64,000 nucleotides of DNA from contig NW_019218054.1 of assembly GCF_002571385.2 (NCBI RefSeq), positions 14,012 through 78,011 of the forward strand, written 5' to 3'. The notes under the pieces were generated by a model. The model did not search any database. It was not told where the DNA came from and was given only the letters and a program-made list of their open reading frames with translations. Made by a program: the position numbers and the translations under genes. This DNA is from Stylophora pistillata (lineage: Eukaryota). Shown piece by piece: positions 11,366-57,250 of the stretch (position 1 is the stretch's first letter; each line of letters opens with the position of its first letter).

Positions 11366-11552
11366 NNNNNNNNNNNNNNNNNNNNNNNNNNNNNNNNNNN
11401 NNNNNNNNNNNNNNNNNNNNNNNNNNNNNNNNNNNNNNNNNNNNNNNNNNNNNNNNNNNNNNNNNNNNNNNNNNNNNNNNNNNNNNNNNNNNNNNNNNNN
11501 NNNNNNNNNNNNNNNNNNNNNNNNNNNNNNNNNNNNNNNNNNNNNNNNNNNN
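11366..11552. other. Assembly gap
   Basis: Run of N. Confidence 1.
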
Positions 11553-12349: not shown

Positions 12350-13314
12350 NNNNNNNNNNNNNNNNNNNNNNNNNNNNNNNNNNNNNNNNNNNNNNNNNNN
12401 NNNNNNNNNNNNNNNNNNNNNNNNNNNNNNNNNNNNNNNNNNNNNNNNNNNNNNNNNNNNNNNNNNNNNNNNNNNNNNNNNNNNNNNNNNNNNNNNNNNN
12501 NNNNNNNNNNNNNNNNNNNNNNNNNNNNNNNNNNNNNNNNNNNNNNNNNNNNNNNNNNNNNNNNNNNNNNNNNNNNNNNNNNNNNNNNNNNNNNNNNNNN
12601 NNNNNNNNNNNNNNNNNNNNNNNNNNNNNNNNNNNNNNNNNNNNNNNNNNNNNNNNNNNNNNNNNNNNNNNNNNNNNNNNNNNNNNNNNNNNNNNNNNNN
12701 NNNNNNNNNNNNNNNNNNNNNNNNNNNNNNNNNNNNNNNNNNNNNNNNNNNNNNNNNNNNNNNNNNNNNNNNNNNNNNNNNNNNNNNNNNNNNNNNNNNN
12801 NNNNNNNNNNNNNNNNNNNNNNNNNNNNNNNNNNNNNNNNNNNNNNNNNNNNNNNNNNNNNNNNNNNNNNNNNNNNNNNNNNNNNNNNNNNNNNNNNNNN
12901 NNNNNNNNNNNNNNNNNNNNNNNNNNNNNNNNNNNNNNNNNNNNNNNNNNNNNNNNNNNNNNNNNNNNNNNNNNNNNNNNNNNNNNNNNNNNNNNNNNNN
13001 NNNNNNNNNNNNNNNNNNNNNNNNNNNNNNNNNNNNNNNNNNNNNNNNNNNNNNNNNNNNNNNNNNNNNNNNNNNNNNNNNNNNNNNNNNNNNNNNNNNN
13101 NNNNNNNNNNNNNNNNNNNNNNNNNNNNNNNNNNNNNNNNNNNNNNNNNNNNNNNNNNNNNNNNNNNNNNNNNNNNNNNNNNNNNNNNNNNNNNNNNNNN
13201 NNNNNNNNNNNNNNNNNNNNNNNNNNNNNNNNNNNNNNNNNNNNNNNNNNNNNNNNNNNNNNNNNNNNNNNNNNNNNNNNNNNNNNNNNNNNNNNNNNNN
13301 NNNNNNNNNNNNNN
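12350..13314. other. Assembly gap
   Basis: Run of N. Confidence 1.
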
Positions 13315-22330: not shown

Positions 22331-22889
22331 GCAAGGCAAAAGAGATCTATTCAGGGTTATACACCTTTTTCCGGTTTCTTTTTAGTTTAAAGTTTGTTTT
22401 ACTTTTACAGCTAGAAATTAAAAAATGAGAAAAACCACCACATTTTAGCGGACTAAAGAAAAAAACTTGTTTGGCGTAAACAACATGATATTTTATGCAT
22501 CAAAAATTCTTTTGTGAAAACCTAGTGAGTATTCTTTAGTACGACCACCTCATTCAGATAACTTTCAGTTTTCCAGCTCGAAAGATGGAAATCTATTCGA
22601 TGTCTTGCTTCTTCCTGAAATACATCTTGCCTCGACTAATATTCCACCGTAGGTAAACAATTCAGTTTATTCTCCCGTTATTCGCCGTGTGTCCTTTTTT
22701 TTTTCCTTTTTTTTTTTTGATATTCGTGTCTCTACGATTTTTGTCTCACACATCACGCAATTATGCAAATCAGACTTTTAGGAGCTGTAATTGTTCGTAG
22801 TGACGCAGACTCTGACACCTACGCCTGCTCGTGACGATAACATAAAAAGACGGCACATTGATCCTTTGAACCATTCGAATACTCACGCC

Positions 22890-25800
22890 ATGGCAGGCAA
22901 GACTGTTCTGACGGCTAATGTAAGTGGGACTATTGATCCAAAAGATGGTGGCAAGGAACCAGAGGTAAGCTGCTTACAATTCCTCCCCAAAATATTTGAT
23001 ACCGCAACAATGAAATTGAAATTCTGATACTTTACGACACAACATGTATTTGTCGTGGTACATTTGTTTACATAGTTTTTTGTCGAAAAGGTATGATCTT
23101 TAAGCCATAAAAGGACCATTCAATAAAAGCAAATAGTGTTCACATTTGAAACTAGAGAAGAGTTCGGCGGTTTAACGCATCGGTTATCGCTTTACGATGA
23201 ATTTCAGAAACTTTTCATAACTGCGATTTTGGGTTGCTGCAATTTTTCTATTAGTAAGTCGTTCTGAATTAAAGTAAAGCTTAAAAGTGAACAATTCTGC
23301 GGCAAACTACTCTCATATATTTTGAAAGGGAGCGTACACGCTAAGATAACAGCTACAATGATTCGCGGAAAACGGGAAGAAGATTTCAAAAGTTATTTAA
23401 AAATATTTGAAAATTTAAGGGTAGTTTGGTACGCCTGCATTTCAACTGAAACGGTACATGCTACGTTATTTGTAAATCTCCACAATTACTGGAAAAAGTT
23501 GTATTTGTGTAATTTTTCGTAAGAATAGTAGTGTTTTACCGTAGCCGTGCAGTAAAGCTGCTTACTCATGCTTCGGATCGAAAGTGGCTACTCACAAGCT
23601 AGTAGTTAATTACTGATTACTAATCAGGAAGTCCGTCACTAAATTGCTCCAACTTACTTACAAAGCGCTGTGATTTACTCACTATGTGAAATAAAGAGGC
23701 TGGCTTGAAAAAAATTAAGATTTCTAATGCTTAACGAACGACTAGCTCTGGGAAAAGGAAATTAGTATGCAAATATGCACACACACTCAAGTGGGCTTAA
23801 TATGGGTCTGATTTCTTCCTTTTGCAGGCCTATAAAATTACTGTTGTTTTCAGCGACGGTACGAAGACTGTTTTACGAAAGAAATACGAAGAATTTGTCG
23901 ACTTGCAGGTAAGTTTAATGATGTTTTCTTAGAATTGCCGGCCCACACACAAACAAACTAACAAAAGCTTCTTTAATTCCATTGTTCACCTAAACCGTGA
24001 AACGTGTACCAGATAGGATAACATTTGCATAGGCATTTGAAGCGAAACGACAAAACCGCTTTTTCGTCTAACCAAAAAAAAAACCGAATCTACTTTTAGT
24101 GACACAGGAAGTCCCAAGTAACCGCATAAGAAATACCGCACATCCGCGTTCATTGTAAGCGAATACGTGGCAGTATTTTTGGAGTTTTCCCTATTAGACT
24201 TGATAATGTTTGAGCGCAAAGGCACTCATCCATTTTATGTACATACATTGGATCAATAATGAATCGAGGCCTCTTTTAAGACCGTTTTTTCCTTGCTTTA
24301 TCGCAAAATAAATCTAACAAATAGCCATTTTAATTTCAAGAATGTAATTGCCCAGCTACCAAAACCACAATCAATCGTTGTTGACATTCGGTCCATAAAC
24401 AAACCCGACTAAGCCCAATACAAACCTCTGATACTCAAGGATTTTATTTGTAGGTTAAGGTGTACGATTTGCTCAAAAAGAAAGGTGGCTACTCTAGAAA
24501 AACATCGAGGACTCTTGTTTCTAGCTTGCCAGGTACGTATGAGTACTCCTTTAGACAAGATAATTGCCTACGTCTGCCGGCAACACATACTCCTGAAAAT
24601 GGTTTTTATCATCGACGAGTGCTTTTCTCATATCAACGGCTTGTTTTGCTGAAATGATGGAGAACAGAAATGTTAACCATTCAAAATCTTTTGCACGACA
24701 GAAAACAACTCAGCACTTTCCAGAATTCTTTTTAAAGACGACTCTTTGAAGAAGATGGGAAGAATCGATGATTTTATGAAGGTAACGATTTCAATTCATC
24801 ATCTTACAAATCTGATGTATTTTGATCATGAATTCCACTTAGTTCGAAACATTACAAAGCCAAGTTCAAAGTTTCACGGCTTATTTTTCTTTTTTTTAAG
24901 GAGCTGTTAACCCTTCCAACATCAGTGAGGGACTCAGAGGCTATAATGATTTTTTTCGGTTCCTTCGAGCAACAAGGAAAGGGAGACAGGTTAGTACCTC
25001 TGTACTGTGAAGCATAAAGTTGGAACGTTTAGAGATAACTATGGATCTTATTTCTTGCAGATCGCGTGAAGAAGAACTAAAGAAAGTGACAAAAGTTGCT
25101 GAAATACCTAGCGGTAAGGATAATAAAAAATTTCCATGGTCCTTTGAGCAAGGAATGTTTTACAACGCATTTACGATCATGAGGGTTTTGACAACTAGCC
25201 TTGTCGTTTTAAAAGAATGAGATATGTGATATTATTTCCGGTAGAGCAATGGATACCACTCCATGAAATCGTTGATTTTACACATAAAATAATTTCTGAT
25301 ATTTGCAGGACGAGATCCACTTTGGAATCTGCCTAATCAAAGTCCAGTGACAAAGCGAAAGTCAACTCAGAATGCCACCTGGATGCCAGAAGATTTGAGT
25401 ATGCTCAGCGAAGAGGCGAGAGCTCATCTTTATCAAAAGCTGAACAGACTTAGCGAAAGGCGACCAAGCAAAGATGTCCCATTACTACCTCTCAGTAAAA
25501 AAAGAGCGGACTCCGTTGATGATGCTGTTCTGGCCAAGCCAAAAGGATCTCCAAGACCAGGCCTGACAAGGAGGCCAATTAGCGTGCCAGTGGGATTGGC
25601 CAGTATGGTCAGGGAAAGCGATGAGATGAAGGAAAACCGTCCAAGCACCCCCAAGCCTTTAAGAGGTAAAGTTCCCTCGCTACAAACTCTCAGTGAATTG
25701 AATGGGCAACACTCTGGGAGTGAAAGCAGCATTTCAGCACTGACGGACACTTCAGCCATCGATTCTGAGTTTTCCGAAGTAGAAGAACCTCGATCAAGAA

Positions 25801-28800
25801 AGATATCAACCCACTCTAGTGTAAGGAGTACTCTGGGCAGAAAGAACCCAAGCAAGAAAAAATATGTTGCCACCTCAACATTCGTTGCTGAAGAAACTGG
25901 TGAAGTTTCACTGGAAGAGGGCGAAGAAATCGAGGTCGTGCAGAAAGAATCCAGTGGTTGGTGGTACGTTAAAAATGACTTTGTTGAAGGATGGGCTCCG
26001 GAGGCATTTCTTGCACCATCTCAAGGATCAAGGTCTTCATCTCCCGAGTCCCAGGTCCCATCCCAGAGTTGGGACACCCAAGATCAATCAATTGAAATTA
26101 GGCCAAGGATGGAATCCCTTACAGAGAGACCAGATGTAAAAGAAGAGGAGAAAGTTGTACCCCAAGCAAAAGTAAAAGTAAGTAAACGTCGAATTCACGA
26201 ATTTCAAAGGCTTCTGCTTATCATATCTTATTCAGGTTTTCTTTAGTATATCTTGTATAGCAAAACTGTCAAGCGAAAATACACATTTGATGTTTGTCAA
26301 AATTTTATTTCTATGCTAGTTCCTTTCTTCTCCTTCGTTTAGTGAAAAGAATGCGATTTAAAAAAGGCAAAGTTATGAGTCTATTTACCAAACAGACGTT
26401 TTTCCTGCTTTCCTGCTTGCACGAGAGTAGACGTAATTGAGTTGTCAATTATCACGCAGGATGCAAGTGTTCAGCTTCAGGCTTCATTGACTAACTTCAA
26501 TGAAAGAGAAAAGCCTGAGTATCGTACCAAATCATCGATCAATGATTGTCAGGACTTTGAAGTCATAATATAGAACACAATGGCTGCCATAACTTACTTG
26601 TAAAAGATAGATGTTTCCATGAAATACAGTCGTTAGAACTGATGCGTTTGAAGGTTATATGAACAAGAAGTTCATAAGACCGCTCAGTGATTAAAACAAA
26701 TTGAACACTCTAGTTGTGTTAGCTTTGAACTAGCAACGGTCGCGACGTCGGTAAATTAAACAATAAACATACTAAAAATGACTTAGCACTTGAGACGCGG
26801 TTAGTGGTCGTAGATTACATAACACCATTGACGCCATTTCCGTATCACTGCGAGGTGACGCTGTACAATGACAGCGCGGTCGACGCTCATTAAAAGCTTT
26901 TGTACTTTCCATTTTCTAGTCTTTGGAACGTCCCGAGGAAAGAGGTTCTCAAAAGAAGCACATAGAAATGAATCGACGACCCAAATTTCTAACTATTGAG
27001 GGAATCCAGAAACGGAAAAACCCAGACAAAAACTACGTAAGTGTCTGTTTTTGTCTTTCAGCTGTATTAGTTATTTTTCATCATTTTTAAACCAGAATTA
27101 TAAAATGATACCACAGATATCATAACAGACCGATGGGAATTCAAAAATAAATAACACTTTGCAAGATTTTGTTGTAATAAGAGGCAAGAAGTCTACCTGA
27201 GTATGATAGACTCAAAGACGGAAGTAAATCAATGTGAAAACTTCACTTACTACAAATTGCCTGTCGAGAATACCACTCTGGGTTTCAACCTGCATTTCAG
27301 AGATGACATACTTCTGTGATTTCAACTATACAGCATAATATCAAATGAAAATGTCTCAGATTTCTTAAACTTTTCTTTTTATCAACTGTTAACTACAAAA
27401 CTACCGAATACGAATACTACAATTAGAAACTCTCTAGAATCCCAGAAACCAAACATTTCCTACAATCAACGATATAACAATCTTGCGTGCAAAAATATGC
27501 CCAGGACAGACAGCGAAAAAACCCTCAGCTTCAGTGATGTTCAAAAACAATAACGAGACATGATAATAAATATGGATGTGGCTTTGGCGGTAACGCTAGA
27601 ACGTCGCTACTTTCTTTTACGGAAAAAATGAATAAACAAAGTAACACGCAATGTCTGCGGGCTTTCCTTGCCAGGTTTACATCCTCAAAGTGGTTTGGTC
27701 AGACGGAAACATCAATATCGTTTACAGAACTTGCAGCGATTTTTTCTTTCTTCAGGTAAGGCGACAAGGGATAAGGGCACCTTTACAGATTTGTTTTTTT
27801 TTTTTTTATTGTTTTCATTGTTACGGCTTATCTATATTGTTGGTGTGAGTCAATAAAGATATTGCCTCTGTGTGGGCTCTCTCGAACAAAACCTTTACGC
27901 AAGTCACTGTGTGGTTTTATAAACGAAGCGCGGACCAATATATCAACTACGTCGTTGAATTCTTTTAATACCTTGCTAGTAAACAAATTAAGTGAGTTGA
28001 AATATTGCCATGTCATCACACATGAGCCATCAACTCGACGTCAAATAATTGGTTAGCTTGGCAGGTCAAGACTCGCGTGTTGGGTAAGGCGGAGGGGCAC
28101 GTGATGGGCACGTGATGTCAGTCTAGAGGTTATACAGCTGTTCACTAAATAACATTCAGCGAAAAATCTGCGTTTGTAAACTCACGAGGAATCATTTGGA
28201 AACAAAAGAGAAAACAAACCATTCAGAACCTAAAGATCTTTTTTGTTTATTTGAGATAAAGGTGTTAACGTTTGGCGTCTTTTCAACAAAGCGTTGTATA
28301 ACAAGGAAAAAAAGATGACAAATAGAAAGAGCGAAAAGTGCATTAAGTGCTTTATTTGTATTTGTTTCAAAACACATCTCAAGATTGGCTTTCCAGTTTA
28401 TTGATCTACAGGGGGTCACTTGGAAAAATGAGTTTTGGCAACTTTTGTAATTCAATACTCTATGTTTTGCTTTTGAATTTTCTTAGGAAAATCTCAGAAA
28501 GGAATGTCCAAGTGCCATTGGAAAGGAAATTCCTGCTTTGAAAGGTAAACTTGAACTGTTTATAAAAATCCAAACTCCAATCCTTTCTGCATAACTATGA
28601 TAAAATCCAAAAAAATCCAAAAATCCAATCCTTTCTGGTGGTATACCAAGAGGCGAAGATCTTTTCACTGAATCATTTCCGTGGCCTGACTTCTATTCAA
28701 GTTAGCTCTTTCGACTCGAAGGTTATGCGCCTCGATGAAAATTTGGGGAGAATAATACGTAATGTTATCTACTCCTAACGTTTCAGAACAGTACATAAAA

Positions 28801-31800
28801 TTCATGTTTAAAAAAAAAATATAGGTTTACAAAGAAACGTTTTAAAACTCAAAAGTATTGCGTGCGTGAGATCTGAGGAATGTTTTATGATCTACTATGA
28901 AGCAAATACAAGTAATAAGTCCATCAGAGCATGACTGGAATTTTAATATATATCTAAATTTTTGTTGTTCTTTTTGTATGCATTGCAGGAAGAAAATTCA
29001 CCGAGAACTGCCAGTTCTGCTTCAAGGATGGAACATGCAAGAGACAAAAATTCATGAACCAGTTTTGCCATGTAAGTAAAAAGCTTTTCATTGCAATTAC
29101 CAATATCTTCTGAAAAGACCTTTGCCGCGTAAAACAGACACTGGATTGTTCTAACAATTTTTCTCTTGCCCTCTTTTAGGAACTGGTGAATGCACCCGAC
29201 CACATCTCTAGAAGCAAGGTTGTCATGGATTTTTGCAGGTCTCGACCTAGCGATGTGCTTCCTCATGGAGAGTGAGTAATATTTTTTGTTTCTTCTGGTG
29301 AAATGATTTTTATCATAGTTATGCAGAAATTAAAATAACTTGATAGATCAAATAAATCTGTTGTTTTTTAAACAGTTTTTCATTTTGAAAGTTTCGCTTG
29401 AATATTGAATTGGTAAATAACATTTCTTCCACCTTTTATCTACCATTAGGGTTGGAAAGAAGGATGGAAAGTCTACGGGCGGTAAGTAAAGTCAACTAAA
29501 TCTAATTTGTCAGAAATACGCAATTAATTGATTAGAAGTTAAATCACGCATTTGTTAATAATTTCAGATGACGACGAGAACGTCCAGATCTCTGGTCCAG
29601 TGGTTTTTGAACAATATGAAGTAATATGCGATTATAAGAAAAAGAACAAGAATGACATTTCCCTACCAGCTGGAGATGTCGTTGACGTCATAGAGAAGAA
29701 TGATTACGGTGAGTAACTTGGAATTTTGAAGACTTTTTTTTGCCCATTAACATCCTCGTTTTAGTAAATATTCTTCCAAACACTCTTGAAACCCTCTTCA
29801 AATCATACGCGAACCCGGCATCCGCATCTCTTCTTTTTTTCCAACGTTTTTGTCCAGTCTTTTACGCGTTCTCCTTCACCTTATTCTCTAACGGATCAAT
29901 TATTTGATCTCCTTTTCAAGGCTGGTGGCTTGTTGATCGTGATGGAGAGTTAGGGTGGGCTCCTGCTTCTCATCTTGAGCCCACAGATGATGGGGCTGAG
30001 GTAACCTCAGCAAAACACTTTGCACCAGGGAAAGGTAGGTTGAAATAGTTGGAATAGATCTCTTGCCATGAACATTTCTGAAATTTCGTGCATCAGAAGA
30101 ACAACGGAGATACCTTTTTCAGCTATCCAAACTGTTGTGATAACATTTTGAATACGTAAAGTTAAATTTTCATTTGTATAATGTGTGGATTCGAAGATTT
30201 TTATAAGGATTATAAAGCAATGTTAATAGAGTCATCAGATGCGAGCTATGATCCACGCCATAAACAATGCACATGTCATTCCACCCATAAACAATGTGCA
30301 GCTGTAGTAACATCTGAATAGGGACCTTAAGAAACCACGACGGCGACGGCAACGAGGACGTAGAAAAACAAGAGATCTAATTGGCAGAACAATAGCTCAG
30401 CAGTGAGTTTTGAAACTTTATACATTTCTTAGCCGTCCTATGCAAAACAACACCGTGAAATCGCCAAAATTTGCGTCGTCTGCAAACCGAAACCGCGACG
30501 GCAAATTATCTTAATTTCCATTTGGAACTCAACGGCTACTTTATACGTCATTCTGAAGTTGAGCTGTGGCGCTGTATGAGATAGTAAGCTCCTGCAGCCA
30601 TTTTTGAAATTCTAACTAAGAGTAGAAATTCATTTTTTAATCGAAGTCTTCCTTGGCGTCGCCGTCGTGGTTTCTTAAGGTCCCCATTAACTTAGCTCAA
30701 ACTCCGTCTAAACTCTCCACGACTATTAAGCTGTCTCCTTCAACGTGTAAGTGTTTGATTGTTAAGCCAACCCATGTTTTGTGCATCAGATGAGATGTTA
30801 ATCAGGAAATTCTTAGAATTCTGAAAAAGGAACGAAAAAAAAGGTAAAAATCCTAAGCTGAAATATACGTTTTTGTCCAACAGAGGAGATCTACGTGTCA
30901 ATTAAACGTTATCAAGCTACAGCTGCGGACGAATTGTCTTTTGATGCTGATGTTATGTTAAAGGTGGTTGAGAAGACCTTGGACGGATGGTGGCTCGTAA
31001 GGTATTCCACAAATAAGAATTTCTAAAGATCTTCTTTCAGCCCGTACAGTTGAATATTTTTTAATTTTTAACTTCAGTGGAACGGGTAATGAATTGTACA
31101 TTATAATAATTTGTGTTACCAGGTATCAGGGTGAAGAAGGATGGGCACCTGCCATGCATCTGAAAAGAGTGAACTCAGACGACTCAGTAAATGCAGAAGA
31201 CAGCACTTTGGATCAATTAAACATCGTCTCCAACGATGACGGTACAATTGAGTTACCAAGTGTTTTTCTTTAAGATATGATATATTTCAATTTACAAAGC
31301 AACCAGGTGGATAATCGAAAAGGGTTTGATGCTACTCTGATTTAATAAATGTAACCGAGGAATTATACTTCATTGACCCAACGTTTCGACACTCCTGTCT
31401 AGTACCTTCATCAGGGGTAATCTAATCGTTGCATTAAGAGGTCCTTTTTCTTTCATGTGATCGATGATTTTTTTTTCATTTTAAACGTCGTCGTAGAAAA
31501 ACAATTCTTCTAGGTTCCCAGAAAAAGGCAAATCAATGACCTTTCAGCTCGTGCTCGCTGGGATCGACCAGTGAGCCATGGGAGGTTGATAAAGCATTAT
31601 CTTAAAACATTAACTACAAACTGCCAGTTTAGAGAGAATAATACCAAAACCCGAGCTCATAAAACTTCATTTAGCCTGATGAAGTAGTTTCCATTCATTA
31701 AGATACTGTTTCCAGAAGTTTAAGCCTTGAAATAAATGCGAAAACCTTTCAACACGAGTTAATATGTCTGATGAAATTTTCATTTCTTTATAATAGAGTC

Positions 31801-33193
31801 TACCAATGACGAAGGCCCGGTAATCCCACGCGGCGCTCCTACACGGCGAAGTCAGGTGAGTCAGGCTTAAGATGATTGCTGTTGACTAAGAGCCTCTGCG
31901 AAAATCATTTTTATTATCACTATTTCAACTTTGCCGATAATAAAGAGCCTGACAGTCCCATAAGTGAGGGAAGCCAAGGAAAACTAATACTATCCGCGCT
32001 TCGCTTTGTTATGGAAAAAGCTTTTCACTCATCTTTACCAGGTTCTCCCGCATCAAAAATCTTTTCCTCCTTGCACGGAAAGTAATTAAATGAACAGACA
32101 GTGATATAACTAAAGTAAATATATGTTGGATAGCCTCTTCTTTGGTAACTATGCCCTTCAAGGGAAGAAAAACCTTTGATTTAAATACGACAAGGGTCGA
32201 AGTAAAAGAGAAAGGATGACGATTCCCAGTTTAAGAAAGACAAAATGTTTCAAAAGAAATGTAAGTAAATATTAGCCCAAAAAACATTCTAATCCCTATC
32301 TTTTGCAGGTCCAAAAAACAGGAAGATTTAGACAGAAGAAAAATTCCCATGACCTTAATGGAGTTCCAGAGGAAGACAACAGTGCCGAAAAAGCCACAGA
32401 AGAAAAGCCATCTCTGTCAGCACAAGTAAATCCCCCTCCTCTGACGAAAAGGATTTCGGGAAAAAACTTGTCTCTCCCAAGGTCACCCTCCAGACCACAC
32501 TCCGGCGAGCTTCCTCACGGAGACGTGACTCGCCAGTTCTCCATTTCAAGCAGTGGATACGAAAGTTCTCCAACTGGCAGCCTTACTTCCCTCGTGTCTG
32601 ACGTTTTTCCCGAGGATACTTCGTCGCCAAAGGGTGGTGTGAAGAGGTGCGCAACACTACCTCAGTTTGACCACATTCAAGCCCAGATTATGCCATCCAC
32701 GCAAAACTCTCCAGAGATACCACGATCTCGATCTGTAACTTCTATGGCACAATACAAAAAAGAATTAGAATTGAGTCTCAATGGTATCCAATCAAATGTC
32801 AGAAAGCCCAGCTCGGGAAGAAGCAGCCCTGTTTCCACCCCGAGAAAGATTTCTGCATCGAATAGATTGAGTCCACTAGCTTCTTCGCCCTCCAGAAATC
32901 GGGAGTTTGGATCTGCATCGCCTCAAAGGTTGTCTCCGAGAGACTCCATTTCTACGGTTGACGATGACGACTATCAAAGCAGCAATTCTGAACGTAAAAA
33001 TGGGGATCAAAGTGAATCAAGGGTATATAAAGCTATTTATACATACATCGCTCAAGAAGATGGCGAGGTTAGCCTTATCGAAGGAGATGACGTTGAAGTA
33101 ATTGAGATGAGTGAAAATGGTTGGTGGCTCGTTCGAACCTCCGAAGAACTTGGATGGGGACCTTCCAATTTTCTACAACTGACGGCATGTTGA
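22890..33193 (+). CDS. Double-PX, four-SH3 scaffold protein (NCF1/p47phox- and SH3PXD2/Tks-like NADPH oxidase organizer), about 1074 aa, 19 coding exons
   Basis: Exons: 22890-22964, 23828-23908, 24454-24532, 24702-24781, 24901-24989 (PX1); 25061-25113; 25309-26177 (Ser-rich + SH3); 26920-27036, 27675-27755, 28487-28544, 28989-29071, 29180-29271 (PX2); 29450-29481; 29568-29708, 29921-30034 (SH3A); 30884-31001, 31123-31241 (SH3B); 31797-31855; 32309-33193 (Ser/Pro-rich + SH3). All GT-AG, phase-consistent, total 3225 nt with no internal stop. Motifs: GIQKRKNPDKNYVYILKVVWSDG, ISGPVVFEQY, KNDYGWW, KTLDGWW. An in-frame TAA lies upstream of the ATG. Confidence 0.85.
30321..30684. mobile_element. MITE with about 27-bp TIRs in an intron of the double-PX gene
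   Basis: Left gggaccttaagaaaccacgacggcgac and right gtcgccgtcgtggtttcttaaggtccc are perfect reverse complements. Confidence 0.85.
31373..31421 (-). ncRNA. Minimal type I hammerhead ribozyme-like motif (Penelope-like element remnant)
   Basis: Minus strand reads ACCC-CUGAUGA-A-GGUACU-agacagg-AGUGUC-GAAACGUU-GGGU: core boxes CUGAUGA and GAAA, 6-bp stem II, ACCC/GGGU stem I, palindromic AACGUU in place of stem III. Confidence 0.6.
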
Positions 33194-35130
33194 GCTCTAG
33201 CAACTCAAGCGCAAAAAAAATGAACAGGAAGTGTTAGAACTTTACCAGCAAATGGGTCACACGCACAAACCGTCGTAAAAGAACTATAACTGGGTAAATT
33301 TCAAACATCTGTGCTCTTTGCTGGAACCTGGGTGTGTAATCTTGCACAAGGCTTATTGCCAAATACAGTACGCCATACCAAAAGTTAATAAGTTCTAATA
33401 AATTAACCTTGATCGGGGGCAAAGTGGAGGAAATAAGGCGCAAGCTTTTGACGCAGTTTTTCCTGAGTACTATTCTTATTTTCCCGTCTCCTATTGTTCC
33501 AATTGTTAAGTCTATTCTACATCTGACTTTGCTTCTAAAATTTAAAAATCATGCTAGTACACTAAAAGGTATTCTTAAGTATTTTGTAAAATATATGAGT
33601 AATCATTAAAAGTTCGCGTGTTAGATTTTAAGGTCATATATCACATAGAGAAACCAAAGTTATTCCAAAAAAAGGTTTTTTTGCCTATCTATTCTTTACA
33701 GATCACAGTTAGAGCGATAAATGTTGATTGAGAAACAGATTTAAACTGTAGGCTACGTCATTACTAGCTTTAGAATCTAGTTAATCGTCTAACGCGTCCA
33801 TTGTAAAGAAAAAAAGCACTAGAGCAGAGATATCAGCAAGTAAAGATTGTACAAAACATAAGTCGTAAATACCCATTTAATTTCAGCAACGCAAGCTTAA
33901 CAATATGCGTTTATAAAAATATTACTTGACGAATTACTTTTTTAAGGTAATTAACGGTCTTTTAACTGTTGTAACTTTTGATTAATAAAATGACATTGTA
34001 TTATGAAAGAAACTACCAAAACTTTTCTTGCTAGTTTGATTCTAGTTTGAAAAATTTTAGTGCTATAACACATCCGTTAAGTAACAAAGTCAACTGAAGG
34101 GAGGCCAAATTGAAATAGTCTTGATCTGTTTTTTCAATTACTTACTCCAGTTCCTGATAAGCGAAAATTAAGTCAATATATGAAACAAATGCTATCTTTG
34201 GTAGAACGCTTTATATACTAGCAGCTTTCATTCTCACCAAAAGAAGAAAAGAAAAAAATCTCTCTCTTCATTCCCTCCTATAATAGGAGAAAGAAACGAG
34301 AAGGAGAAAAATATGTACCGGAGAAGTGAAAGAAAACTACGATAGCGAATCCTCATTATATATTGTATTCCAAAGGCAACCTCCCTCAAGTTAATTTCGA
34401 CTCGAGATATTTTGCATCTCCAGAATAAAGTACTAGCAGCGTGCGTATTGCTGGAATGCTTCGGTGGAGAACAACCAGCCGCTGCATGAGATGCCCACAC
34501 GAGCGAACCATGCGACACGAAATTGGCCATTTCTAGATTTTCCTAGGATTTTTTGAAAAGCTGCTCTACTTATGTCAGATTTTACTTAAATGAGCAAAAA
34601 TCGCTCTTAGCTCAGGCCTGAATATGAGATCCACACATTCAGAGGATTAGAGAGAGGCAAACACACTGATGCTCGGAATAGCAACTCTGCAGCCTCCTCG
34701 CCTAAGGAATTGGCAGATAATCCTGATATGGGAATCGCTAGTTCTCGGGCTTTCCCAACTTGGTACTTTCAATATGTAATCGTTGTCGAAAAGTACTTTT
34801 TCAGTGATCAGTGAAATTTTTTTGCCTTACTGAGTCCCCCAACATTGACTTGAAACCTACGTTTTGGTGGACACTAGCAATGACATAAGGGTGAAACGTC
34901 GGTTCACTATAGGGAATCCTACCCGAAAATCCATTCTCTACCAAACTACAGACCCTCTCTCAAAAAAACTGTCTCGAACATTGAATAAAGAAACAAAAAA
35001 ATATAATTAGAATCAATAACAAAAACGCTATAGTTTAAGAACAGTCTACTATTCACAAGTGGTCTCTTCGTGTGTTTAAGATATACCAATGTTTGGCCTG
35101 AATAGGCAGTTCTTTTTTCGATCTGACTTT

Positions 35131-38100
35131 TCAACGTGAGAATTCGATATCTTCGTCATCGTTGAATTCTTCCAAGTAATTTGAGGGGGCCCAACCCACC
35201 TCGCCTTGCTCATTTTGTATAAACCACCATCCGCTTTCACTCTTGCGCAATATGGGTAAATATTCTCCACTCTGTAGGTCTATCTCTTGGCTGTCGAGAT
35301 CTCCTTTGTAATCTTCAACTGCACGACAAGACATCTGGAGTGTGCCTTCTTCTTCTTCTTCGAAATCTTTTTGTTGCAAAGTGCATTCTGTTTCTCCGTT
35401 GACTTGAGGAGCAGGACAAAGTACGCTGGACGATAACCAACCTTTCATTCCTCCTTTATTCTTGACCAACCAGAATCCTGTGGATGCTTTGTCTAAAACT
35501 TGGACATATTCACCTTTAGAGAGGCGCATTTCATCGTCAACTTCGCAGTCTTCAATCACAAGATAGATATTAATTGAAAGGTCATCCTCATCTCCTGTAA
35601 CGTTTACTTGGATTTCAAAGCTTTCTGTGGAGCGAATGCTACCATCAAGGCTCATTCTCTCATCGTGGTCAAGAACTTCTTCTGTTTCATCTCCTCTAAC
35701 GATTGGCTCTCCTGTTTCATCAACCACAATTGCAGGTGAGTGGCTGGTTTTATGATGCAGAACCACTGTGTTGAACGACATTTGCGCCAGCTCGGGATCT
35801 GATTCGTCGTCACTCGAGCTCCACTTCTGGATGTCATCATTAAGCTCCTCTGACTTCTCTTTGTCTATCCCCGCTTGACGCATGAGTTTTCCACTTGGTG
35901 AAGGAGGAACCCTTCTAGGAGCTGCAGTCCGAGGGGATTCGTATCCTGAGGGAACTGGCGGTGGCCTCATCGGTGAATTAAGTCTTGGAGAGTCTTCGCT
36001 TAAAGAAATTGTTTTGAAGTGCCTCGATGAATCAAGAGGTACCTCGAAATTTATCGGTGTATCGGACACACTTTCGGGACTCTCTGCATTTTCGGTGGTT
36101 GTAGCACTATCATTTCTTCCATCAGAATAGTTAATGTTGTTATCGTCACCGTTGAGGTCATGCTGCAAGTTACCGGTGTCATTCTCGTTCCCACTTGCGG
36201 AGTTTGAGTCTTGTGGAGACAGATCGTTGAGATCATTTTCTGACTCTTCTGTTTCTGTATTTTCAGTGCCATTTGGATTTGATTCTGGTATCTCGTTGAT
36301 CTCTGGCATTTCACTTGTCTCCACACTTCGACTCTGGGAAATCTCCATGGACCGGTCGTCATTGGTTGGTGGCTCGGGTGCCTCCTCAACGCTGTGCAAA
36401 GACGACATTAAGGACGAAAGTGATGTTTTCATACCTGATGTTTCTTCGCTTGCTTTCGCTTTCTGCTTTTTGTTTCGTTTATTCAATTGCAAAAAATCAG
36501 AACCCTCAACAACTGCACCATTAGAATCTCCATTGTCTTGTACACCAGCAAACCTCAGTTTAGTTTTCTGTCAACAACAAAAACAAAAAGGATATAGTCA
36601 CATTACATCACATGCAATCAGGCAAAAACATAAAAACCCTCTACCGAAATCAACATCAGCGCTTGTCATTCTGCTAAGTGTTCCTCAGCAATAACAAATT
36701 CTTTGCGTTTAAAGTTGTCTCTTTCCGTCTTATTTTAGTTCACTTTATCAATAATTGTCTTGACTCAATTTACCCCCCACCCCTCCCCCACTGCAGCTAT
36801 CCATAAATCAACATGTGAGAGCTATGATGGTTTTTGCCTTCCTTTTCCTTCATTTTACTTAAAGGTCCGGTAATACGGGCAACATTTTTCTTCAACTTGT
36901 CTTGCAACATTGTTGCATTGCAAGTTGAAACCCTATGTTGCGCGTATTACCACGTTCGTGACCAACTTGTCTCGCAGCATAATATAGTGTTGCAAATTCG
37001 CGGAATCCTGCCCGTATGATTGGTCAGTCGTATGTAAACAAAGATGGCGGCTGCTGAACTCTTTCTTTGTCGGAAGAGAGCGCTTGCAGCTCTCTCTGTT
37101 TGGGCCTTTTGCTCGGTGAAGACGAGGAATTGTCTCGAAAACGAAATCGGAAATTTTACATGCAACAATGGATTTCCCGGAGAGAGGAGAGAGGCGTCTT
37201 TCACCAGCTAATTAGAGAGCTTGAAGTGGGGGATGTCGTGGCGTACAGAGAGCTTTTCCGTATGACGAAGGAGCAATTTTCCTTTCTGTTGGGAAAAGTA
37301 TCCCCGCTGATCCAAAAGAAAGAGCAGCCATCACCCATCAATTCTGTCCGGGCGACAATACAGCCAGATGAACGCCTAGCTGTAACGCTACGGTATTTGG
37401 CAACGGGAGAAACTTACCATTCCTTCGAGTACTCGTTCAGAATTTCAAGCCAAACAATTTCTTCAATCGTGTCAGAAACAAGCCGTGCCCTGTACAAGGT
37501 AAGCAGGTCTTGAAATCGTTGGTTTATTTATATAACAGCGTCGAAATTAACATTCTTGACATACATTTTAATTTCCTATACTACAGGTACTTGCTCCAGA
37601 ATATCCAAAAGTACCAAACACAGAAAGTGAATGGGACGCAATGGCGGACAAACTGGAGGCAAGATGGAATTTTCCGAATGGTATTGGCGCTATAAACGGA
37701 AAACGTGTCATAGTTCAGCAGCCATCTAATTCTGGCTCTTATTATTACGATTACAAAGGGAACAACAGCATTGTTCTCCTTGCTGTGTTTGGGCCTGACT
37801 ACCAGTGCCTTTGGGCGAGTGCTGGAACAAATGGTCGTTCGCCAGACTCTGCCATATGGCAAAATTGTGACCTGAAAGAGGCACTGAGTTTAAGTCACAA
37901 CACTTTGAATTTACCAAAGCCTAGACCCTTGCCAGAGAGAGTAATGCCAGTACCATATGTCCTAACGGGAGACGATGTCTTTGCCTTGACAAGATTTATG
38001 ATGAAGCTTTTCCCACTGGCAGGATTGTCAAGAGCAGAGCAGATTTTCAATTACAGGTTGTCGCGCATGCGGAGAAGCTCAGAAAATTGTTTTGGTATCA

Positions 38101-41100: not shown

Positions 41101-44100
41101 TACGATAACCCTCCAGGTCTTTGTATAGGGAAAATGTTTGGCTCTCGGAAAGTTTCTAGTCTACTTCAACAGCCTCAAGCTCATCTCCGTCCGCCATATT
41201 TGTTTTAAATTTGCCGCGTCGCCGCGCTTTGCGACAGCCAATCACAGGCGTCAAATTCAAATTTGTTGCAAGGCAAGTTGAAGCAAAACTAAAATTTGTT
41301 GCAGAAAGAAGAACTCGAGTCTACTTTGCGTAACACGTTGCCTCAACTTGCAACACTATATTTTGTTGCAAGACAAGTTGGCCACAAACGTGGTAATACG
41401 CGCAACAAAGGGTTTCAACGTGCAATGCAACAATGTTGCAAGACAAGTTGAAGAAAAATGTTGCCCGTATTACAGGACCTTAATTCTTAGAGAAAGATTT
41501 TCTGATTCAGCCACTTACCTTTTTGCTTTCTTTCCCAAACTCAGGAATTTCTGTAAAACGTAACAACAGGAAAAAAAATCGTCATGATTTTTTGAATAAG
41601 TGCACTAACATCAATCTGGAATTTTTGACTGCTCAGCACTAGAAAGGATACTCTGACCGAAAAATTATAATTTTAATTTTCTCTTTTTCAAGTTGCTTCT
41701 TTTGATACCTGTTACACAATTAAAATAAAAACCTCAACTGAGTTCAATGCAGGCTAAATCCAAATAGTTATGTTTGTGCTATGGGTACTAAAAATTAAAA
41801 ATAAATCGAAATCCAATCGGGTGTTTAAAATCCATCCGGGATTCCATCTGTTTTTTGCCGTTCTTCCCTATACTATGATTCACTAAGAAAACACTCACAA
41901 CCACTCCCCCACCACGCCTGAAAAAATAACTAGATGCGAAACTAAAGCCAACCATTAATCGGTCACTTGCTTTTAAAGGTGCTTCAAAAGGGCGGTTGTT
42001 TTTTGTTTTTTGTTTTTTGTCTTTTTTTTGGGGGGGGGGGAGGGGGGAAGTGAAATTAAGAAACGCTTTGAATGATTAACCAGACGATTGGCGGTTTACA
42101 ATGAGAAGAGTAAAGCAAATTTATCATCCTGGCCAGCGTGTGATTTCTACGCCACGTTAGCCTCTTACTATGACAGAACGAGGAATCCACCATTTTAAAC
42201 AACACATGACGTGATTTAATCAAAATTTCATACCTCTGATCATTCCTATGTTGTCGTCATCGCCATCATCAAAGTCACGGAGCTGATTTTTGGCAAACAG
42301 TCTGGATTTCCTTCTTCCATTTCTCGATTGCCTTCGATCGTATCCCAGCCGTTTCAGATACATTGCGGGCACCAATCCTTCTCTTCCAAGGTATCTGTCA
42401 AAAAATTATCACTGTTATAATTTTATATAATCCAGGAGACGTGGATAATAAAGGTCGGCTTATAAACATGTTGTATTCTTTAGGAAACAGAATAAGTAAA
42501 TGAATAAATGGGTCCCAAGGAAGCTTGATGAGAACGATTTTTTTGAGCAGAGGGGGAGCCTTAAATAGACTAACGTCTCACCCAGGAGAAATAACAACTT
42601 TCCTGGTCTCTTCGCGCTAAGGAAACTACGACATCCTCCACCAGTACGAGCGATGGTCCAAACAAAGTAAAGTTACACCTTTCATGATGCCAGAGAAATG
42701 TCAAACGGTGTTGTTATAAGGAGAAATCTCTTAGAATTTTCGATTGCCTTCTGGTTGATACCAAAAACATCATGGGCTGAATCAAAATTTCCTTTTTAAT
42801 TTCGCTCCAAGGAAGAGCGGCAATATGACGTAGATTTTCTAGTCTAGATGATGATTCACAACCGGTAACCTCGCCAACGGCTTGGTATCAAGTGATCTGC
42901 ATCGCTAATTGCTGATCGACGGGCTCAGTGTTTCCTTCTGGGTTACACTTTGATGAGTTTTTTTGGATACTGAGCAAAGAGAGAGATCTGATTAATCCGT
43001 TTCTAGGAACTTACGAGGCTTTCCACCATCCGTCATAGTTTTTCTCTAGGATTTGCAGGTTAACTCCAATTTCAAAACTCAGTTCATCATCTTCACTGGC
43101 AACATAACGCTTAGCTGTCACATAGAATTCACCTGCAGAAAAGAGCTGCATTAGCTGACGAGAAGAAGATTTACTCTATCAAAACCTAACATTGTGTAAT
43201 TAATTTGATATCTGGTTGACATTCAAATGATCTCACCTCTTCCAACTTGAAATGTTTGTATATTGCCATATTCTGTCATTTCGTCCGCGGGCTCAAGATA
43301 CAGTGCTGGAGCCCAGCCCACTTCCCCTTCAGACTCGACCAACCACCAGCCTGCACGAGCAATTGGTAAGGCCACAATTAACCACGTTTGATCATTTGTT
43401 GATTGTCTTTTCATTATACGATTAATGTAATTCACCCTCGATAACTTGAGCCTATCCTAAGGAGCCGGTTGTAGAATATCACTGAGGGGAGGGGGGTGGA
43501 GGGTTTTGCTAGTGTCATGATAGAATTTGCCTGATCTCCCATAAGGCTCTCTAATAATCCTATGATGGCCCCTCTTTGGAAGTTAATTGGCAGTCAGTGT
43601 TCTATAGTCTCACCTTTATACTCTGTTGGTGACTACTGAGAGTCCCCTCCGTGTCTCTGAAAACCACGTGATACCCCGCGAAACCCTCCAAACCCCCCAT
43701 CGGAGGGATTGTCCCGGGTTCAAAGCGGTTCTTTTCCCTTTCTTTCGAGGATTGTCGTTACAGTATGAACTCGTACCCCAGGACATTGTTTAACTCTCCA
43801 CAAATCCAATGTGCTGTTTTTAAAAGTTTAATAGCTGCTCTTTCCCGAAGCAAACCTAACAAAGAAGCTCTCTATGTGACAACTGACAGGACCTTTTATT
43901 TGCAAATTTCAGTTGTTTGTTTATTTGTTCGTTTGTCTGTTTTTTTGTTTTTGCTTTTGTGATTCCCGGATACATCGAAGCTTTTCAACAGTTATCCCCA
44001 AAGAGCCAGAGGTTATGTAAGCTACAATGATTGGTAAGTAACAAACATCGGTCATAAATTTTGTTTTTTGTGTACTCACCGCATTCTCTTTTCTCAATGA

Positions 44101-55700: not shown

Positions 55701-57147
55701 TTTCACCCTCACAATCTGCATGCCACCAGCCTGACATAAAACCAAGGGAAAAAGTTGGTTTGCTCACTGTATTCCCATAAGAACGCCATCCAAAATTTGA
55801 TCCATTTATTTCTCTAAAGTGAGCGCTGATTTTGCCACTCAATATTTGTCACCAGGGAGGGAGGTCGGGGGATTACTGGGGAGATCACATGGTTTCAGAG
55901 AAACAATGGGGGCATTAGTTGTCTCTAACACAGTATAAAGGGGAGGACTATAAAAAATTGACTGCAAATAATATCATTAGAATACTACAGAAGCCTAGCT
56001 AGGGAGGATAAGGTTAATATCAATGTGACAAAACTTCCGACCTTCCCTCCCCTCCCTCAAGGCAAAAAATAATGACCGGTCCCTTAGCGTTCTTTCAGGC
56101 TCTCACCGCTCTCGTGTTTTTTTATCACACCCACTGTGTATCCTTTGGTAAGGCCAATGTCACTGAGATATTTCTTCTGGTAATTCTCCAACGCAACAAA
56201 CTGCTCCAAAAGCACTGGTTCCCCGATAGAATTTGCTATTGAAACGAAAACATCGCAAAACGGTGAGCTACTGAATTACCAACTGAAGCTCCCGTAGAAA
56301 TATTCTATACTATCCTCACCAAAACTAAGATTTCGTCGCCTTAAGAATTGGATTTATTAATTCCTTCGCTTCTTAATTTTCCAATTTTGGACCAGCTGGC
56401 CAGGCTAACTTTGGAAGTCATTTGGAAAAACCTAATGACAAGAGCCATATACCTACTTTTTATTATTGCAAGACATTTTAATGAAGAGCATCAATCCTGG
56501 AATATAAGCGATTTTTTTTATCCAAAAACTGGAAGTCTTGTACTATTTTTTGGCGTCATTCATCGTTAAAATTGTGAAAAAAAAAGTTTAGTCTCTTACT
56601 CTTCTCTAATGAACCCACCTGTGAGAAATTTCGATGACAACCTCCTTAACAGAGATGATTTCATCGAAAATTTCGACTCTTTTTTTTCGAGGTGGTTTTC
56701 TGCAAGATGCACACACACACGTTCATTCATTGTCAGCCAGATAAATTACCTGAGCTCAAAATAGAAGTTTGATATTGTCTGAGTACATTTGATATTGATT
56801 TATTGAGTCAAGCAAGCACTAACTTTCTTTTGATCCTTTTGAAAACTTCCAGATCCTCAGGGCGCGGAGTAAAAAAACTTGTCACCAGCTCACACCCGGA
56901 TATGTGTTTGGGTAGTGTGATCAAATCCTAGACCATGAATACATTACTAAGGGTGAGTAATATCGTGTACAGGTGGCTTTATTGACATCTGTTTCACAAA
57001 AATTTTGGGTCCACATAAAAAAAAAAAAATTGAGATCTTGAAGGATTCGGTTGAAAATTCCATCACATAAAAATAGACTGTAGCTAGCTAACCTTCCAAA
57101 ACCGAACAGTCCGTTTCTTAGCGCCAAAAAGTGCAATACATGTTCCT

Positions 57148-57149
<2 letters not shown>

Positions 57150-57181
<32 letters not shown>

Positions 57182-57250
57182 GTTTATTGTCTAACGTGAG
57201 GCATGGTTGCCCAATTGCCCGAGCCAGAGGCTCATGTATAAAACGGTAGA
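57150..57250 (-). mobile_element. 3' terminus of a LINE/SINE-type retroposon ending in AATAAA and (TTGA)n
   Basis: Minus strand atgagcctctggctcgggcaattgggcaaccatgcc...aataaactttgattgattg; (aatc)n microsatellite at 57150-57180. Confidence 0.5.

What the first reader, a model, noticed from the sequence alone, without database searches (positions are those of the whole stretch)
22890..33193. A two-PX-domain NADPH-oxidase-organizer-like protein apparently made by in-frame fusion of two tandem paralogues
Seen in sequence: the large SH3-bearing exon ends at a strong phase-0 donor (AAA|GTAAGT, 26177). The next exon (26920-27036, 117 nt, phase 0, no stop) reads SLERPEERGSQKKHIE-MNRRPKFLTIEGIQKRKNPDKNY, and its last 23 codons look like a complete first exon of a PX gene (compare MENRTVKEASVEGVQRRTKPKKHF of the neighbour). 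The result is PX-SH3-PX-SH3-SH3-SH3. Established knowledge: p47phox, NOXO1, Tks4 and Tks5 each have a single N-terminal PX. Inference: an upstream paralogue lost its tandem SH3 pair, kept its big terminal SH3 exon and became spliced into the former 5'UTR of the downstream gene. The first SH3 (GEVSLEEGEEIEVVQKESSGWW) most resembles the last SH3 (GEVSLIEGDDVEVIEMSENGWW), both in large exons after Ser-rich linkers, which fits this model.
Basis: partly seen in the sequence, partly recalled or inferred. Interest (0 to 1): 0.85.

Follow-up and report, generated by a model that had tools for sequence, protein, structure and literature searches.

The report
Coral two-PX p47phox/Tks-type adaptor gene
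Two neighbouring copies of an NADPH-oxidase-organizer/Tks-type adaptor gene in this coral are really spliced into one messenger RNA that encodes a 1074-residue protein with two lipid-binding-type PX domains and four SH3 domains, an arrangement conserved in many corals but not described for this protein family.

Summary

- **Splice junction.** RNA reads and contigs from three runs join the phase-0 donor after 26177 to the acceptor before 26920. A DNA run shows no such joint, and the stranded raw-read RNA run has zero depth in 26290-26856.
- **Product.** The open frame is 19 exons and 1074 aa: PX1, linker, SH3-A, linker, PX2, tandem SH3, an A-P-T-R-R-S motif, a long linker and a last SH3.
- **Same ORF in other transcriptomes.** A 1074-aa transcript-derived ORF from a close relative is 93.8% identical with no gaps (P0216). 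More distant full-length ORFs carry the same junction (P0215, P0217, P0218). So do two partial Orbicella faveolata RefSeq models.
- **Genomic conservation.** Nine other coral genomic loci keep the donor, the acceptor and an open stretch of 13-18 codons ahead of the old start codon. Its length is always a multiple of three.
- **PX1 is a real PX.** PX1 is divergent, but its predicted structure matches only PX domains.
- **Lost key residue.** Both PX domains lack the arginine that corresponds to p47phox R43.

Origin by tandem duplication plus read-through splicing is plausible but only partly tested. Function as a membrane-targeted, p47phox-like autoinhibited scaffold is inferred. I rate it a new variant of a known kind. 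The scan's only other notes here are this same stretch and the A-P-T-R-R-S exon.

The parts
22814..22964 (+). Exon 1: 5' UTR as far as it can be mapped, then the start codon at 22890 and the first strand of PX1
   Evidence: The relative's mRNA L011 aligns from 22814. Orthologous ORFs start at the same Met. The X1 contig starts 3 nt before the ATG.
23828..24989 (+). PX1 exons 2-5: 23828-23908, 24454-24532, 24702-24781, 24901-24989
   Evidence: GT..AG borders and phases were checked, and RNA joints are. PX1 passes the Pfam PX cut-off in orthologue P0163 (29.4 bits). The AlphaFold model of the PX1 of P0216 matches only PX domains.
25061..25113 (+). Exon 6, a 53-nt linker exon
   Evidence: RNA joints 24986>25058 and 25112>25308.
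25309..26177 (+). Exon 7, the large exon. It holds a Ser/Pro/basic linker, SH3-A (about 25857-26027) and a 50-codon acidic tail that ends at the phase-0 donor AAA|GTAAGT.
   Evidence: Pfam SH3_1 scores 37.3 bits. The exon is single-copy in the genome. The donor is kept in 9 other coral loci.
26178..26919 (+). The intron removed in the fused mRNA. It holds the read-through stop at 26244-26246 and an AATAAA near 26762.
   Evidence: X23 has zero depth in 26290-26856. X1 has only a depth-5 contig at 26201-26636, against 130 for the spliced contig.
26920..27036 (+). Bridge exon: 16 codons of former 5' leader (26920-26967) followed by the former first coding exon of the downstream copy (ATG at 26968)
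   Evidence: The joint 26177>26920 appears in three RNA runs. The same acceptor and an open frame of 13-18 codons are present in 9 other loci and in 7 transcript-derived ORF clusters.
27675..29271 (+). PX2 exons 2-5: 27675-27755, 28487-28544, 28989-29071, 29180-29271
   Evidence: RNA joints are. Pfam PX matches residues 490-574 of P0216. These exons are 85-100% identical across corals.
29450..30034 (+). A 32-nt exon (29450-29481) and the two exons of the first tandem SH3 (29568-29708, 29921-30034)
   Evidence: Pfam SH3 hit on the exon and RNA joints.
30884..31241 (+). Second tandem SH3, exons 30884-31001 and 31123-31241
   Evidence: Pfam SH3 hit. The model of the tandem pair superposes on the p47phox tandem SH3 (7yxw_A: Z 16.4, rmsd 1.8 A, 127 residues).
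31797..31855 (+). 59-nt exon carrying the A-P-T-R-R-S motif, which resembles the core of the p47phox autoinhibitory region
   Evidence: P and the first R are invariant in a 20-sequence family alignment. [AP]PTRR[ST] is present in all orthologues. There is a pLDDT peak of 83 between disordered flanks.
32309..33193 (+). Last coding exon: Ser/Pro-rich linker, C-terminal SH3 (about 33020-33190) and the stop codon at 33191-33193
   Evidence: Pfam SH3_1 scores 37.8 bits. The exon is colinear with P0216 and P0215.
33194..35053 (+). 3' UTR, as far as the relative's mRNA maps
   Evidence: The last L011 block aligns to 32306-35053 at 87.6% identity.

Best explanation
**What it is (shown).** One transcription unit, about 22814-35053 on the + strand, has 19 coding exons. 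It makes an mRNA whose 1074-aa product belongs to the p47phox-related organizer family (p47phox, NOXO1, Tks4/5). The domain order is PX1, a linker of about 190 aa, SH3-A, a linker of about 70 aa, PX2, a p47phox-type tandem SH3 pair, an A-P-T-R-R-S motif, a linker of about 230 aa and a C-terminal SH3.

**How it arose (inferred).**
- A tandem duplicate sat head to tail upstream of the ancestral PX-SH3-SH3-SH3 gene.
- The upstream copy lost its tandem SH3 exons.
- Its last exon now reads 50 codons past its SH3 to a phase-0 donor.
- That donor is spliced to an acceptor 48 nt upstream of the downstream copy's start codon, so the old leader is translated as a linker.
- This happened before the sampled corals diverged.

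**How it works (inferred).**
- It is a membrane-recruited scaffold.
- At rest the tandem SH3 pair is probably occupied by the internal P-x-R-R-S motif, as in p47phox.
- After release the pair would bind a proline-rich partner. p22phox is one candidate, and a p22phox gene is present in this genome.
- The extra PX1-SH3-A module adds a second membrane or protein contact and a further SH3 site.
- Both PX domains lack the arginine equivalent to p47phox R43, so their ligands are probably not the canonical ones.
- A minor isoform of the upstream half alone may also be made by retaining the bridged intron.
For: **RNA in the window species**
- The joint 26177>26920 is present in three RNA runs and absent from the DNA run.
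- In X23 it has 3 spanning reads plus 4 adapter-truncated reads. Neighbouring joints have 5-16 reads.
- X23 has no depth in 26290-26856.

**Gene model**
- The model is 1074 aa with no stop.
- P0216 is 1074 aa and 93.8% identical with no gaps. P0220 is 97.7% identical and has the window's exact junction residues.
- L011 maps with identical exon borders.

**Domains**
- Pfam finds PX twice and SH3 four times in P0215 and P0217. In P0216 it finds SH3 four times and PX2.
- The PX1 model has mean pLDDT 71, and its Foldseek matches are all PX domains: Bem1p, p47phox, p40phox, NOXO1.
- The tandem SH3 model superposes on p47phox with Z 16.4.

**Conservation**
- Nine other coral loci keep the donor, the acceptor and the frame. 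The leader-derived stretch is 39-54 nt long, always a multiple of three, with no stop.
- PX1 and PX2 each form one clade with similar species groupings.

**Family and partner**
- The nearest solved relatives are p47phox chains.
- Database relatives are named SH3PXD2A-like or NCF1.
- A p22phox exon is present in the genome (53.6 bits).
Against: **Signs that the halves may also be expressed separately**
- Scaled to exon length, depth in X23 is about 1.5-3.6x on the PX1 exons, 5-7x on the big exon and 6-12x on the second half.
- In X2 the 3' contig has depth 51, against 11.5 for the contig that spans the junction.
- Either pattern could come from 3' bias or from extra transcripts of the second half alone.
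- The Met at 26968 is invariant and has a purine at -3.
- RNA contigs of two other species keep the bridged intron while upstream introns are spliced out (P0163, P0204).

**Limits of the data**
- Junction read counts are small.
- PX1 of the window's own lineage does not pass Pfam on its own.
- All functional statements are inferred. No binding or activity data exist.
- The species of most related loci are unknown.
Confidence: 0.85

Rival explanations
1. Two independent genes, a PX-SH3 gene and a PX-SH3-SH3-SH3 gene. The junction reads would come from occasional read-through (conjoined-gene) transcripts with no role of their own.
For: - The Met at 26968 is conserved in a fair Kozak context.
- Contigs P0163 and P0204 in other species retain the bridged intron.
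- Depth is higher over the second half.
- An AATAAA lies in the intron near 26762.
Against: - Junction support is of the same order as the flanking junctions, and X23 has no reads in 26290-26856.
- The main contig of X1 (depth 130) runs through the junction, while the intron contig has depth 5.
- Frame, acceptor and donor are kept in 9 other genomes, and indels occur only in threes.
- Every highly similar protein recovered with the second half as query also carries upstream-half sequence across the junction. No form of about 616 aa was found.
Confidence: 0.07
2. One locus with several regular products. The fused 1074-aa protein would be made alongside substantial amounts of an upstream-half protein (through intron retention or intronic polyadenylation) and a second-half protein (from an internal start site near 26900). 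The locus would then work as an isoform switch.
For: The same observations as for the first rival, plus the 5'-to-3' rise in depth in two runs.
Against: - No place where many reads begin or end was reported near 26920, and no intron reads were seen in X23.
- No second-half-only ORFs appear in the transcript-derived proteins.
- The intron signal is about 4% of the spliced contig's depth in X1.
Confidence: 0.2
3. The fused protein is real, but PX1 is a relic: a PX-shaped spacer or protein-contact module that no longer binds lipid. Functionally the protein would then have a single PX domain.
For: - PX1 has K or T at the position of p47phox R43, N at the position of K79, and K at the position of R90 in five of six orthologues.
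- PX1 is below the Pfam threshold in the window's lineage.
- PX1 sits on a very long stem in the tree.
Against: - PX1 is conserved among corals: 63-72% identity to the query in alignment A1, with many invariant positions.
- PX1 is predicted to fold as a PX domain.
- Some PX domains bind lipid through non-canonical sites (established knowledge).
- PX2 also lacks the R43 equivalent, so the same argument would apply to both domains.
Confidence: 0.4
4. The tandem arrangement is an assembly or mis-join artefact of this genome.
For: None was found. The window does contain N runs elsewhere.
Against: - DNA contigs of run X17 tile the whole stretch.
- Nine independent assemblies show the same order.
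Confidence: 0.01

Closest known systems
[quoted passage not shown]
   Same: - PX followed by a tandem SH3 pair. The modelled pair superposes on the p47phox pair at Z 16.4 and 38% identity.
- A P-x-R-R-S motif lies just after the second SH3, at the place of the core of the autoinhibitory region.
- p47phox chains are the best solved matches of family members.
- A p22phox gene is present in the genome.
   Different: - It has a second PX and an extra SH3 upstream, and a further C-terminal SH3.
- It has no hit to the Pfam families of the vertebrate p47phox C-terminus, PF08944 and PF16621.
- The equivalents of R43/F44 are T/C in PX2 and K/Y in PX1.
Tks4 and Tks5 (SH3PXD2B and SH3PXD2A)
   Same: - PX plus several SH3 domains separated by long disordered linkers.
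- RefSeq names the Orbicella models 'SH3 and PX domain-containing protein 2A-like'.
- Early-branching p47phox-like genes group nearer to SH3PXD2 than to vertebrate p47phox (PMC2121648).
   Different: - Tks proteins have one N-terminal PX and keep the R-R-Y motif (representatives).
- Here a PX lies in the middle of the chain, between SH3 domains.
Nematostella vectensis p47phox-like protein (Kawahara and Lambeth 2007, PMC2121648)
   Same: A cnidarian member with PX, a bis-SH3 pair, further SH3 domains and a polybasic region proposed as a prototype of the autoinhibitory region.
   Different: It is described with a single PX. I did not test whether an anemone orthologue of the upstream half exists.
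The neighbouring paralogues C and D in this window (minus strand)
   Same: - They belong to the same family and lie in tandem, head to tail, only 1.1 kb apart.
- D has the PX-SH3-SH3-linker-SH3 layout.
   Different: - They are not joined. D ends in a stop 17 codons after its SH3, and a stop lies 4 codons before the ATG of C.
- Both keep the canonical Y-R-R-[YF] motif.
PX-PX proteins of Trypanosoma (PMC10380299)
   Same: Two differing PX domains in one chain.
   Different: They are unrelated in architecture: they have no SH3 domains and are not of the p47phox family.

Membership tests
p47phox-related organizer family (p47phox, NOXO1, Tks4, Tks5) | A PX domain at the N-terminus | tested here: met
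   - PX1 is on its own below the E 0.001 limit used in the Pfam scan in the window's lineage (P0216).
- PX1 passes the Pfam cut-off in orthologue P0163 (29.4 bits).
- The PX1 model of P0216 matches only PX domains, with TM about 0.6 and probability 1.00.
p47phox-related organizer family (p47phox, NOXO1, Tks4, Tks5) | Two adjacent SH3 domains that form one joint binding groove | tested here: met
   The predicted model aligns over both domains at once with p47phox in its p22phox complex: 7yxw_A, 127 residues, rmsd 1.8 A, Z 16.4. This is a prediction, not a solved structure.
p47phox-related organizer family (p47phox, NOXO1, Tks4, Tks5) | Exactly one PX domain per chain | tested here: not met
   Two PX domains are present: Pfam gives two PX stretches in P0215 and P0217, and there is fold evidence for PX1. 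This is the feature that makes it a variant.
p47phox proper (NCF1) | An autoinhibitory region after the second SH3 that fits the tandem-SH3 motif [PAVIL]PPR[PR] (PMC12730246) | tested here: inconclusive
   - A-P-T-R-R-S is a near match, with T in place of the second P, and no strict match exists.
- The motif is conserved.
- It has a local pLDDT peak of 83.
- Docking in the groove was not verified.
p47phox proper (NCF1) | C-terminal p47phox region with the proline-rich site for p67phox (Pfam PF08944 and PF16621) | tested here: not met
   These families are listed for the vertebrate NCF1 hits but not for P0216, P0215, P0217 or P0218 at E 0.001.
p47phox proper (NCF1) | PX pocket residues R43, F44, K79 and R90 | tested here: not met
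   - Positions were mapped through P0044 against chain 8wej_C and the alignment.
- PX2 has T or Q, C, R or K, and R at these four positions.
- PX1 has K or T, Y, N and K (R in P0217 at the R90 position).
Tks4/Tks5 (SH3PXD2) | Four or five SH3 domains after a single PX, with the canonical R-R-Y motif | tested here: not met
   Four SH3 domains are present, but one lies before a second PX, and the R-R-Y motif is changed in both PX domains.
NADPH oxidase organizer (functional class) | Binds the proline-rich tail of p22phox and supports NOX activity | not testable with these tools
   Only the presence of a p22phox exon in the genome was shown.

The most novel reading that the evidence does not exclude
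Corals have fixed a double-PX organizer in which both PX pockets were remodelled. The R43 equivalent is lost in both, and a conserved Cys cluster (C-x-x-C … C … C-H) is inserted in PX2. The protein would then act as a coincidence or redox sensor that targets a NOX/p22phox complex, or a Tks-like actin scaffold, to a coral-specific membrane such as the phagosome or symbiosome. Retention of the bridged intron would serve as a switch between the fused form and the upstream-half form.
Probability: 0.12. Interest if true: 0.75.

Novelty: new variant of a known kind. Interest (0 to 1): 0.55.

Why it matters
- **New layout.** Every characterised member of the p47phox/Tks family has one N-terminal PX. 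A conserved, expressed member with a second, internal PX and an extra SH3 is a new layout for this family.
- **A dated example of gene fusion.** It shows how read-through splicing between tandem duplicates makes a multi-domain protein. The unfused state is preserved next door in the same window.
- **Testable questions.** What do two non-canonical PX domains bind? Does the p47phox-type autoinhibition pre-date vertebrates?
- **Annotation.** Public models are partial (Orbicella XP_020603739.1 and XP_020603693.1). Gene finders may split this locus in other corals.

Tried and rejected
- **Exon-by-exon Pfam scans of the short PX exons** gave nothing because the pieces are too short. The same was true of 27-aa exon queries against solved structures.
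- **Apparent internal PX domains in P0034 and P0131** are chimeric gene models with one PX, or other proteins, not two-PX proteins.
- **The large representative search** returned mostly single-exon genomic ORFs and no full-length form. The full-length forms came from cluster members and a region search.
- **SH3 tree:**
- **PX tree:** PX1 and PX2 are not resolved as sisters.
- **A second fusion between paralogues D and C** was checked and rejected.
- **Run and sample accessions** were sought in papers to name the species, and none was found.
- **One locus (P0003)** had no DNA on hand.
- **The joined window model was not sent to any search, fold or family tool.** It was built only inside sandbox scripts for local comparisons. 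All outside searches used single-exon references, database proteins or the transcript loci L010 and L011.
N runs were left as they are.
Full report
**Scope and rules**

The window is eukaryotic, about 38% G+C, with GT..AG introns. The RNA runs that hold the stretch are labelled coral.

I built the spliced model only inside sandbox scripts. I never sent the joined model to a search, family or fold tool. Outside searches used single-exon references, proteins returned by the databases, or the transcript loci L010 and L011. N runs (1406-2076, 11366-11552, 12350-13314, 46412) were left untouched.

**1. The observation**

- The upstream half has seven exons: 22890-22964, 23828-23908, 24454-24532, 24702-24781, 24901-24989, 25061-25113 and 25309-26177.
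- The last of these ends AAA|GTAAGT in phase 0. Reading through reaches TAG at 26244-26246.
- Exon 26920-27036 follows a pyrimidine tract and AG. It is 117 nt, open in phase 0, and contains ATG at 26968.
- Eleven further exons end at the stop codon 33191-33193.
- With exon 4 starting at 24702, as RNA shows, the joined frame is 1074 aa with no stop.

**2. Is the junction used?**

I laid four runs on 24400-30040.

| Run | Type | Result at 26177>26920 |
|---|---|---|
| X23 | stranded RNA, raw reads | 3 spanning reads, plus 4 reads that stop at 26177 and go on with TCTTTG (the start of the next exon) and then adapter |
| X1 | RNA contigs | a 3223-nt contig at depth 130 carries all exons, from 3 nt before the first ATG through the part laid |
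| X2 | polyA RNA contigs | a 1431-nt contig crosses the junction |
| X17 | DNA | tiles the stretch evenly, no joint |

- In X23, flanking joints have 5-16 reads.
- X23 has zero depth in 26290-26856.
- In X1, only a depth-5 contig lies in the intron (26201-26636).

**3. Independent full-length evidence**

- Cluster members and a region search gave transcript-derived ORFs that carry the same junction.
- P0216 is 1074 aa and 93.8% identical to the window model with no gap.
- P0220 is 792 aa and 97.7% identical, and has the window's exact junction residues.
- P0215 is 1054 aa and 59-62% identical. Its contig L010 has a 147-nt leader with in-frame stops.
- P0217 and P0218 are 1081 aa. P0206 and P0219 are partial.
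- Two partial RefSeq models of Orbicella faveolata also cross the junction. XP_020603739.1 covers the PX1 tail, SH3-A, the bridge and PX2. XP_020603693.1 covers SH3-A, PX2 and three SH3 domains. Both are named SH3PXD2A-like.
- The mRNA contig L011 maps to the window in 20 blocks with my exon borders. This extends the unit from 22814 to 35053.

**4. Conservation in genomes**

Nine other coral genomic loci show the same order (L001, L003-L008, L012, L014).

- In each, the big exon ends at a phase-0 GT donor.
- The read-through tails differ in length and sequence, as expected of an intron.
- The bridge exon follows a pyrimidine tract and AG.
- The stretch between the acceptor and the Met is 13-18 codons (39-54 nt), always a multiple of three and never with a stop.
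- An untranslated leader would not keep its frame through repeated indels.
- For L014, the predicted junction is the one found in transcript ORF P0218.

**5. Domains**

- SH3 hits on single exons confirm four SH3 domains.
- Pfam finds two PX and four SH3 stretches in P0215 and P0217. In P0216 it finds four SH3 and PX2.
- PX1 is divergent. It passes the Pfam cut-off in P0163 (29.4 bits) but not alone in the window's lineage.
- I therefore modelled residues 1-140 of P0216 with seven orthologues. The model has mean pLDDT 71, with three strands followed by helices.
- Its Foldseek matches are all PX domains: Bem1p, p47phox, PI3K-C2, p40phox, NOXO1.
- The architecture PX-SH3-PX-SH3-SH3-SH3 is confirmed.

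**6. Family and mechanism**

- Family members match p47phox chains best among solved structures.
- Database relatives of the second half are named SH3PXD2A-like or NCF1.
- A model of residues 600-830 places the two SH3 domains as in p47phox bound to p22phox: 7yxw_A, 127 residues, rmsd 1.8 A, Z 16.4.
- The motif A-P-T-R-R-S sits on its own 59-nt exon.
- It is conserved as [AP]PTRR[ST] in all orthologues. P and the first R are invariant across 20 family members. Its pLDDT is 83 between disordered flanks.
- It is a near match, not a strict match, to the published tandem-SH3 motif [PAVIL]PPR[PR] (PMC12730246).
- The genome has a p22phox exon.
- I infer a p47phox-like autoinhibited scaffold. No binding was tested.

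**7. PX pockets**

I mapped positions through P0044 against p47phox chain 8wej_C and the alignment.

| p47phox position | Family representatives | PX2 | PX1 |
|---|---|---|---|
| Y41-R42-R43-[YF]44 | Y-R-R-Y | Y-R-[TQ]-C | R/Q-K-[KT]-Y |
| K79 equivalent | K | basic (R or K) | N |
| R90 equivalent | R | R | K (R in P0217) |

- The window's neighbours C and D keep the canonical motif.
- PX2 also has a conserved Cys cluster and a six-residue deletion.
- Both PX domains form tight coral clades on long stems. That pattern suggests change of function followed by constraint.
- What they bind is unknown.

**8. Origin**

- The first six exons of each half have the same phase series.
- The exon sizes are similar: 75, 81, 79, 80, 89, 53 in the first half and 69, 81, 58, 83, 92, 32 in the second.
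- The SH3-A exon is single-copy. Its nearest relative in the genome is the gene's own last SH3 exon (41 bits, 43% identity).
- Paralogues D and C lie head to tail, 1.1 kb apart, and are not joined. They show the presumed starting state.
- The trees do not resolve SH3-A with the last SH3, or PX1 with PX2.
- The duplication-plus-fusion history is therefore plausible but not shown.

**9. Other isoforms**

- Depth rises from 5' to 3' in X23 and X2.
- The old start Met is invariant.
- RNA contigs P0163 and P0204 keep the bridged intron.
- Against separate products, the search with the second half as query returned no second-half-only ORF.
- X23 has no reads in 26290-26856.
- I take the fused form as the main product and leave minor isoforms open.

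**10. Novelty**

- Papers describe one PX per chain for this family. Cnidarian p47phox-like genes are described as nearer to SH3PXD2 (PMC2121648).
- In my search, two-PX proteins are discussed mainly for Trypanosoma, and these are unrelated (PMC10380299).
- Partial models of the fused gene sit unremarked in RefSeq.
- I rate it a new variant of a known kind, of moderate interest.

Noticed in passing
window 28989-29071 (PX2 exon 4) and 27675-27755: PX2 carries a Cys cluster conserved in corals (N-C-x-F-C-x-K-D-G-T-C … Q-F-C-H), where other family members have a single Cys. It could be a metal or redox site.
   Followed up: no
window 26071, 26092, 26121: Three tri-allelic, non-synonymous variable sites lie within 50 nt of the linker after SH3-A (codons 407, 414, 424). 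DNA run X17 has two haplotypes, both unlike the reference, and the RNA shows both. P0151 and P0216 carry the alternative residues.
   Followed up: partly
window 30317-30371 and 30634-30688: 55-nt inverted-repeat arms, 84% complementary and 262 nt apart, lie in the intron between the two tandem-SH3 exon pairs. This looks like a small inverted-repeat transposon.
   Followed up: partly
window 35131-36492, minus strand: A large open exon (453 aa) with an acidic, Ser-rich linker and two C-terminal SH3 domains. Its stop lies only about 78 nt from the mapped 3' end (35053) of the fused gene, so the two 3' ends converge. It may be the last exon of paralogue C.
   Followed up: partly
window 42337-52702 and 53784-58813, minus strand: Two further paralogues of the family. 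C starts at 52702 and D ends at 53784. They lie head to tail and are not joined in frame. The linker of D shows an in-frame stop in one alignment, so D may be spliced differently or decaying.
   Followed up: partly
window 25440-25600 (first linker, residues about 200-245): The first linker holds two motifs conserved in all orthologues. One is a P-x-x-P site of class II type. The other is P-R-P-G-L-(basic)-R-P-[FI]-S-V, which fits a basophilic kinase site.
   Followed up: no
P0163 and P0204 (RNA contigs of two other corals): Both contigs have the upstream introns spliced out but keep the intron after the big SH3 exon. This gives 445-455-aa PX1-SH3-A ORFs, which may be an upstream-half isoform or may be pre-mRNA.
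   Followed up: partly
G000:C438:122800-122994 (locus L009): A p22phox (Cytochrom_B558a) exon is present in the same genome at 53.6 bits, over the Pfam cut-off.
   Followed up: no
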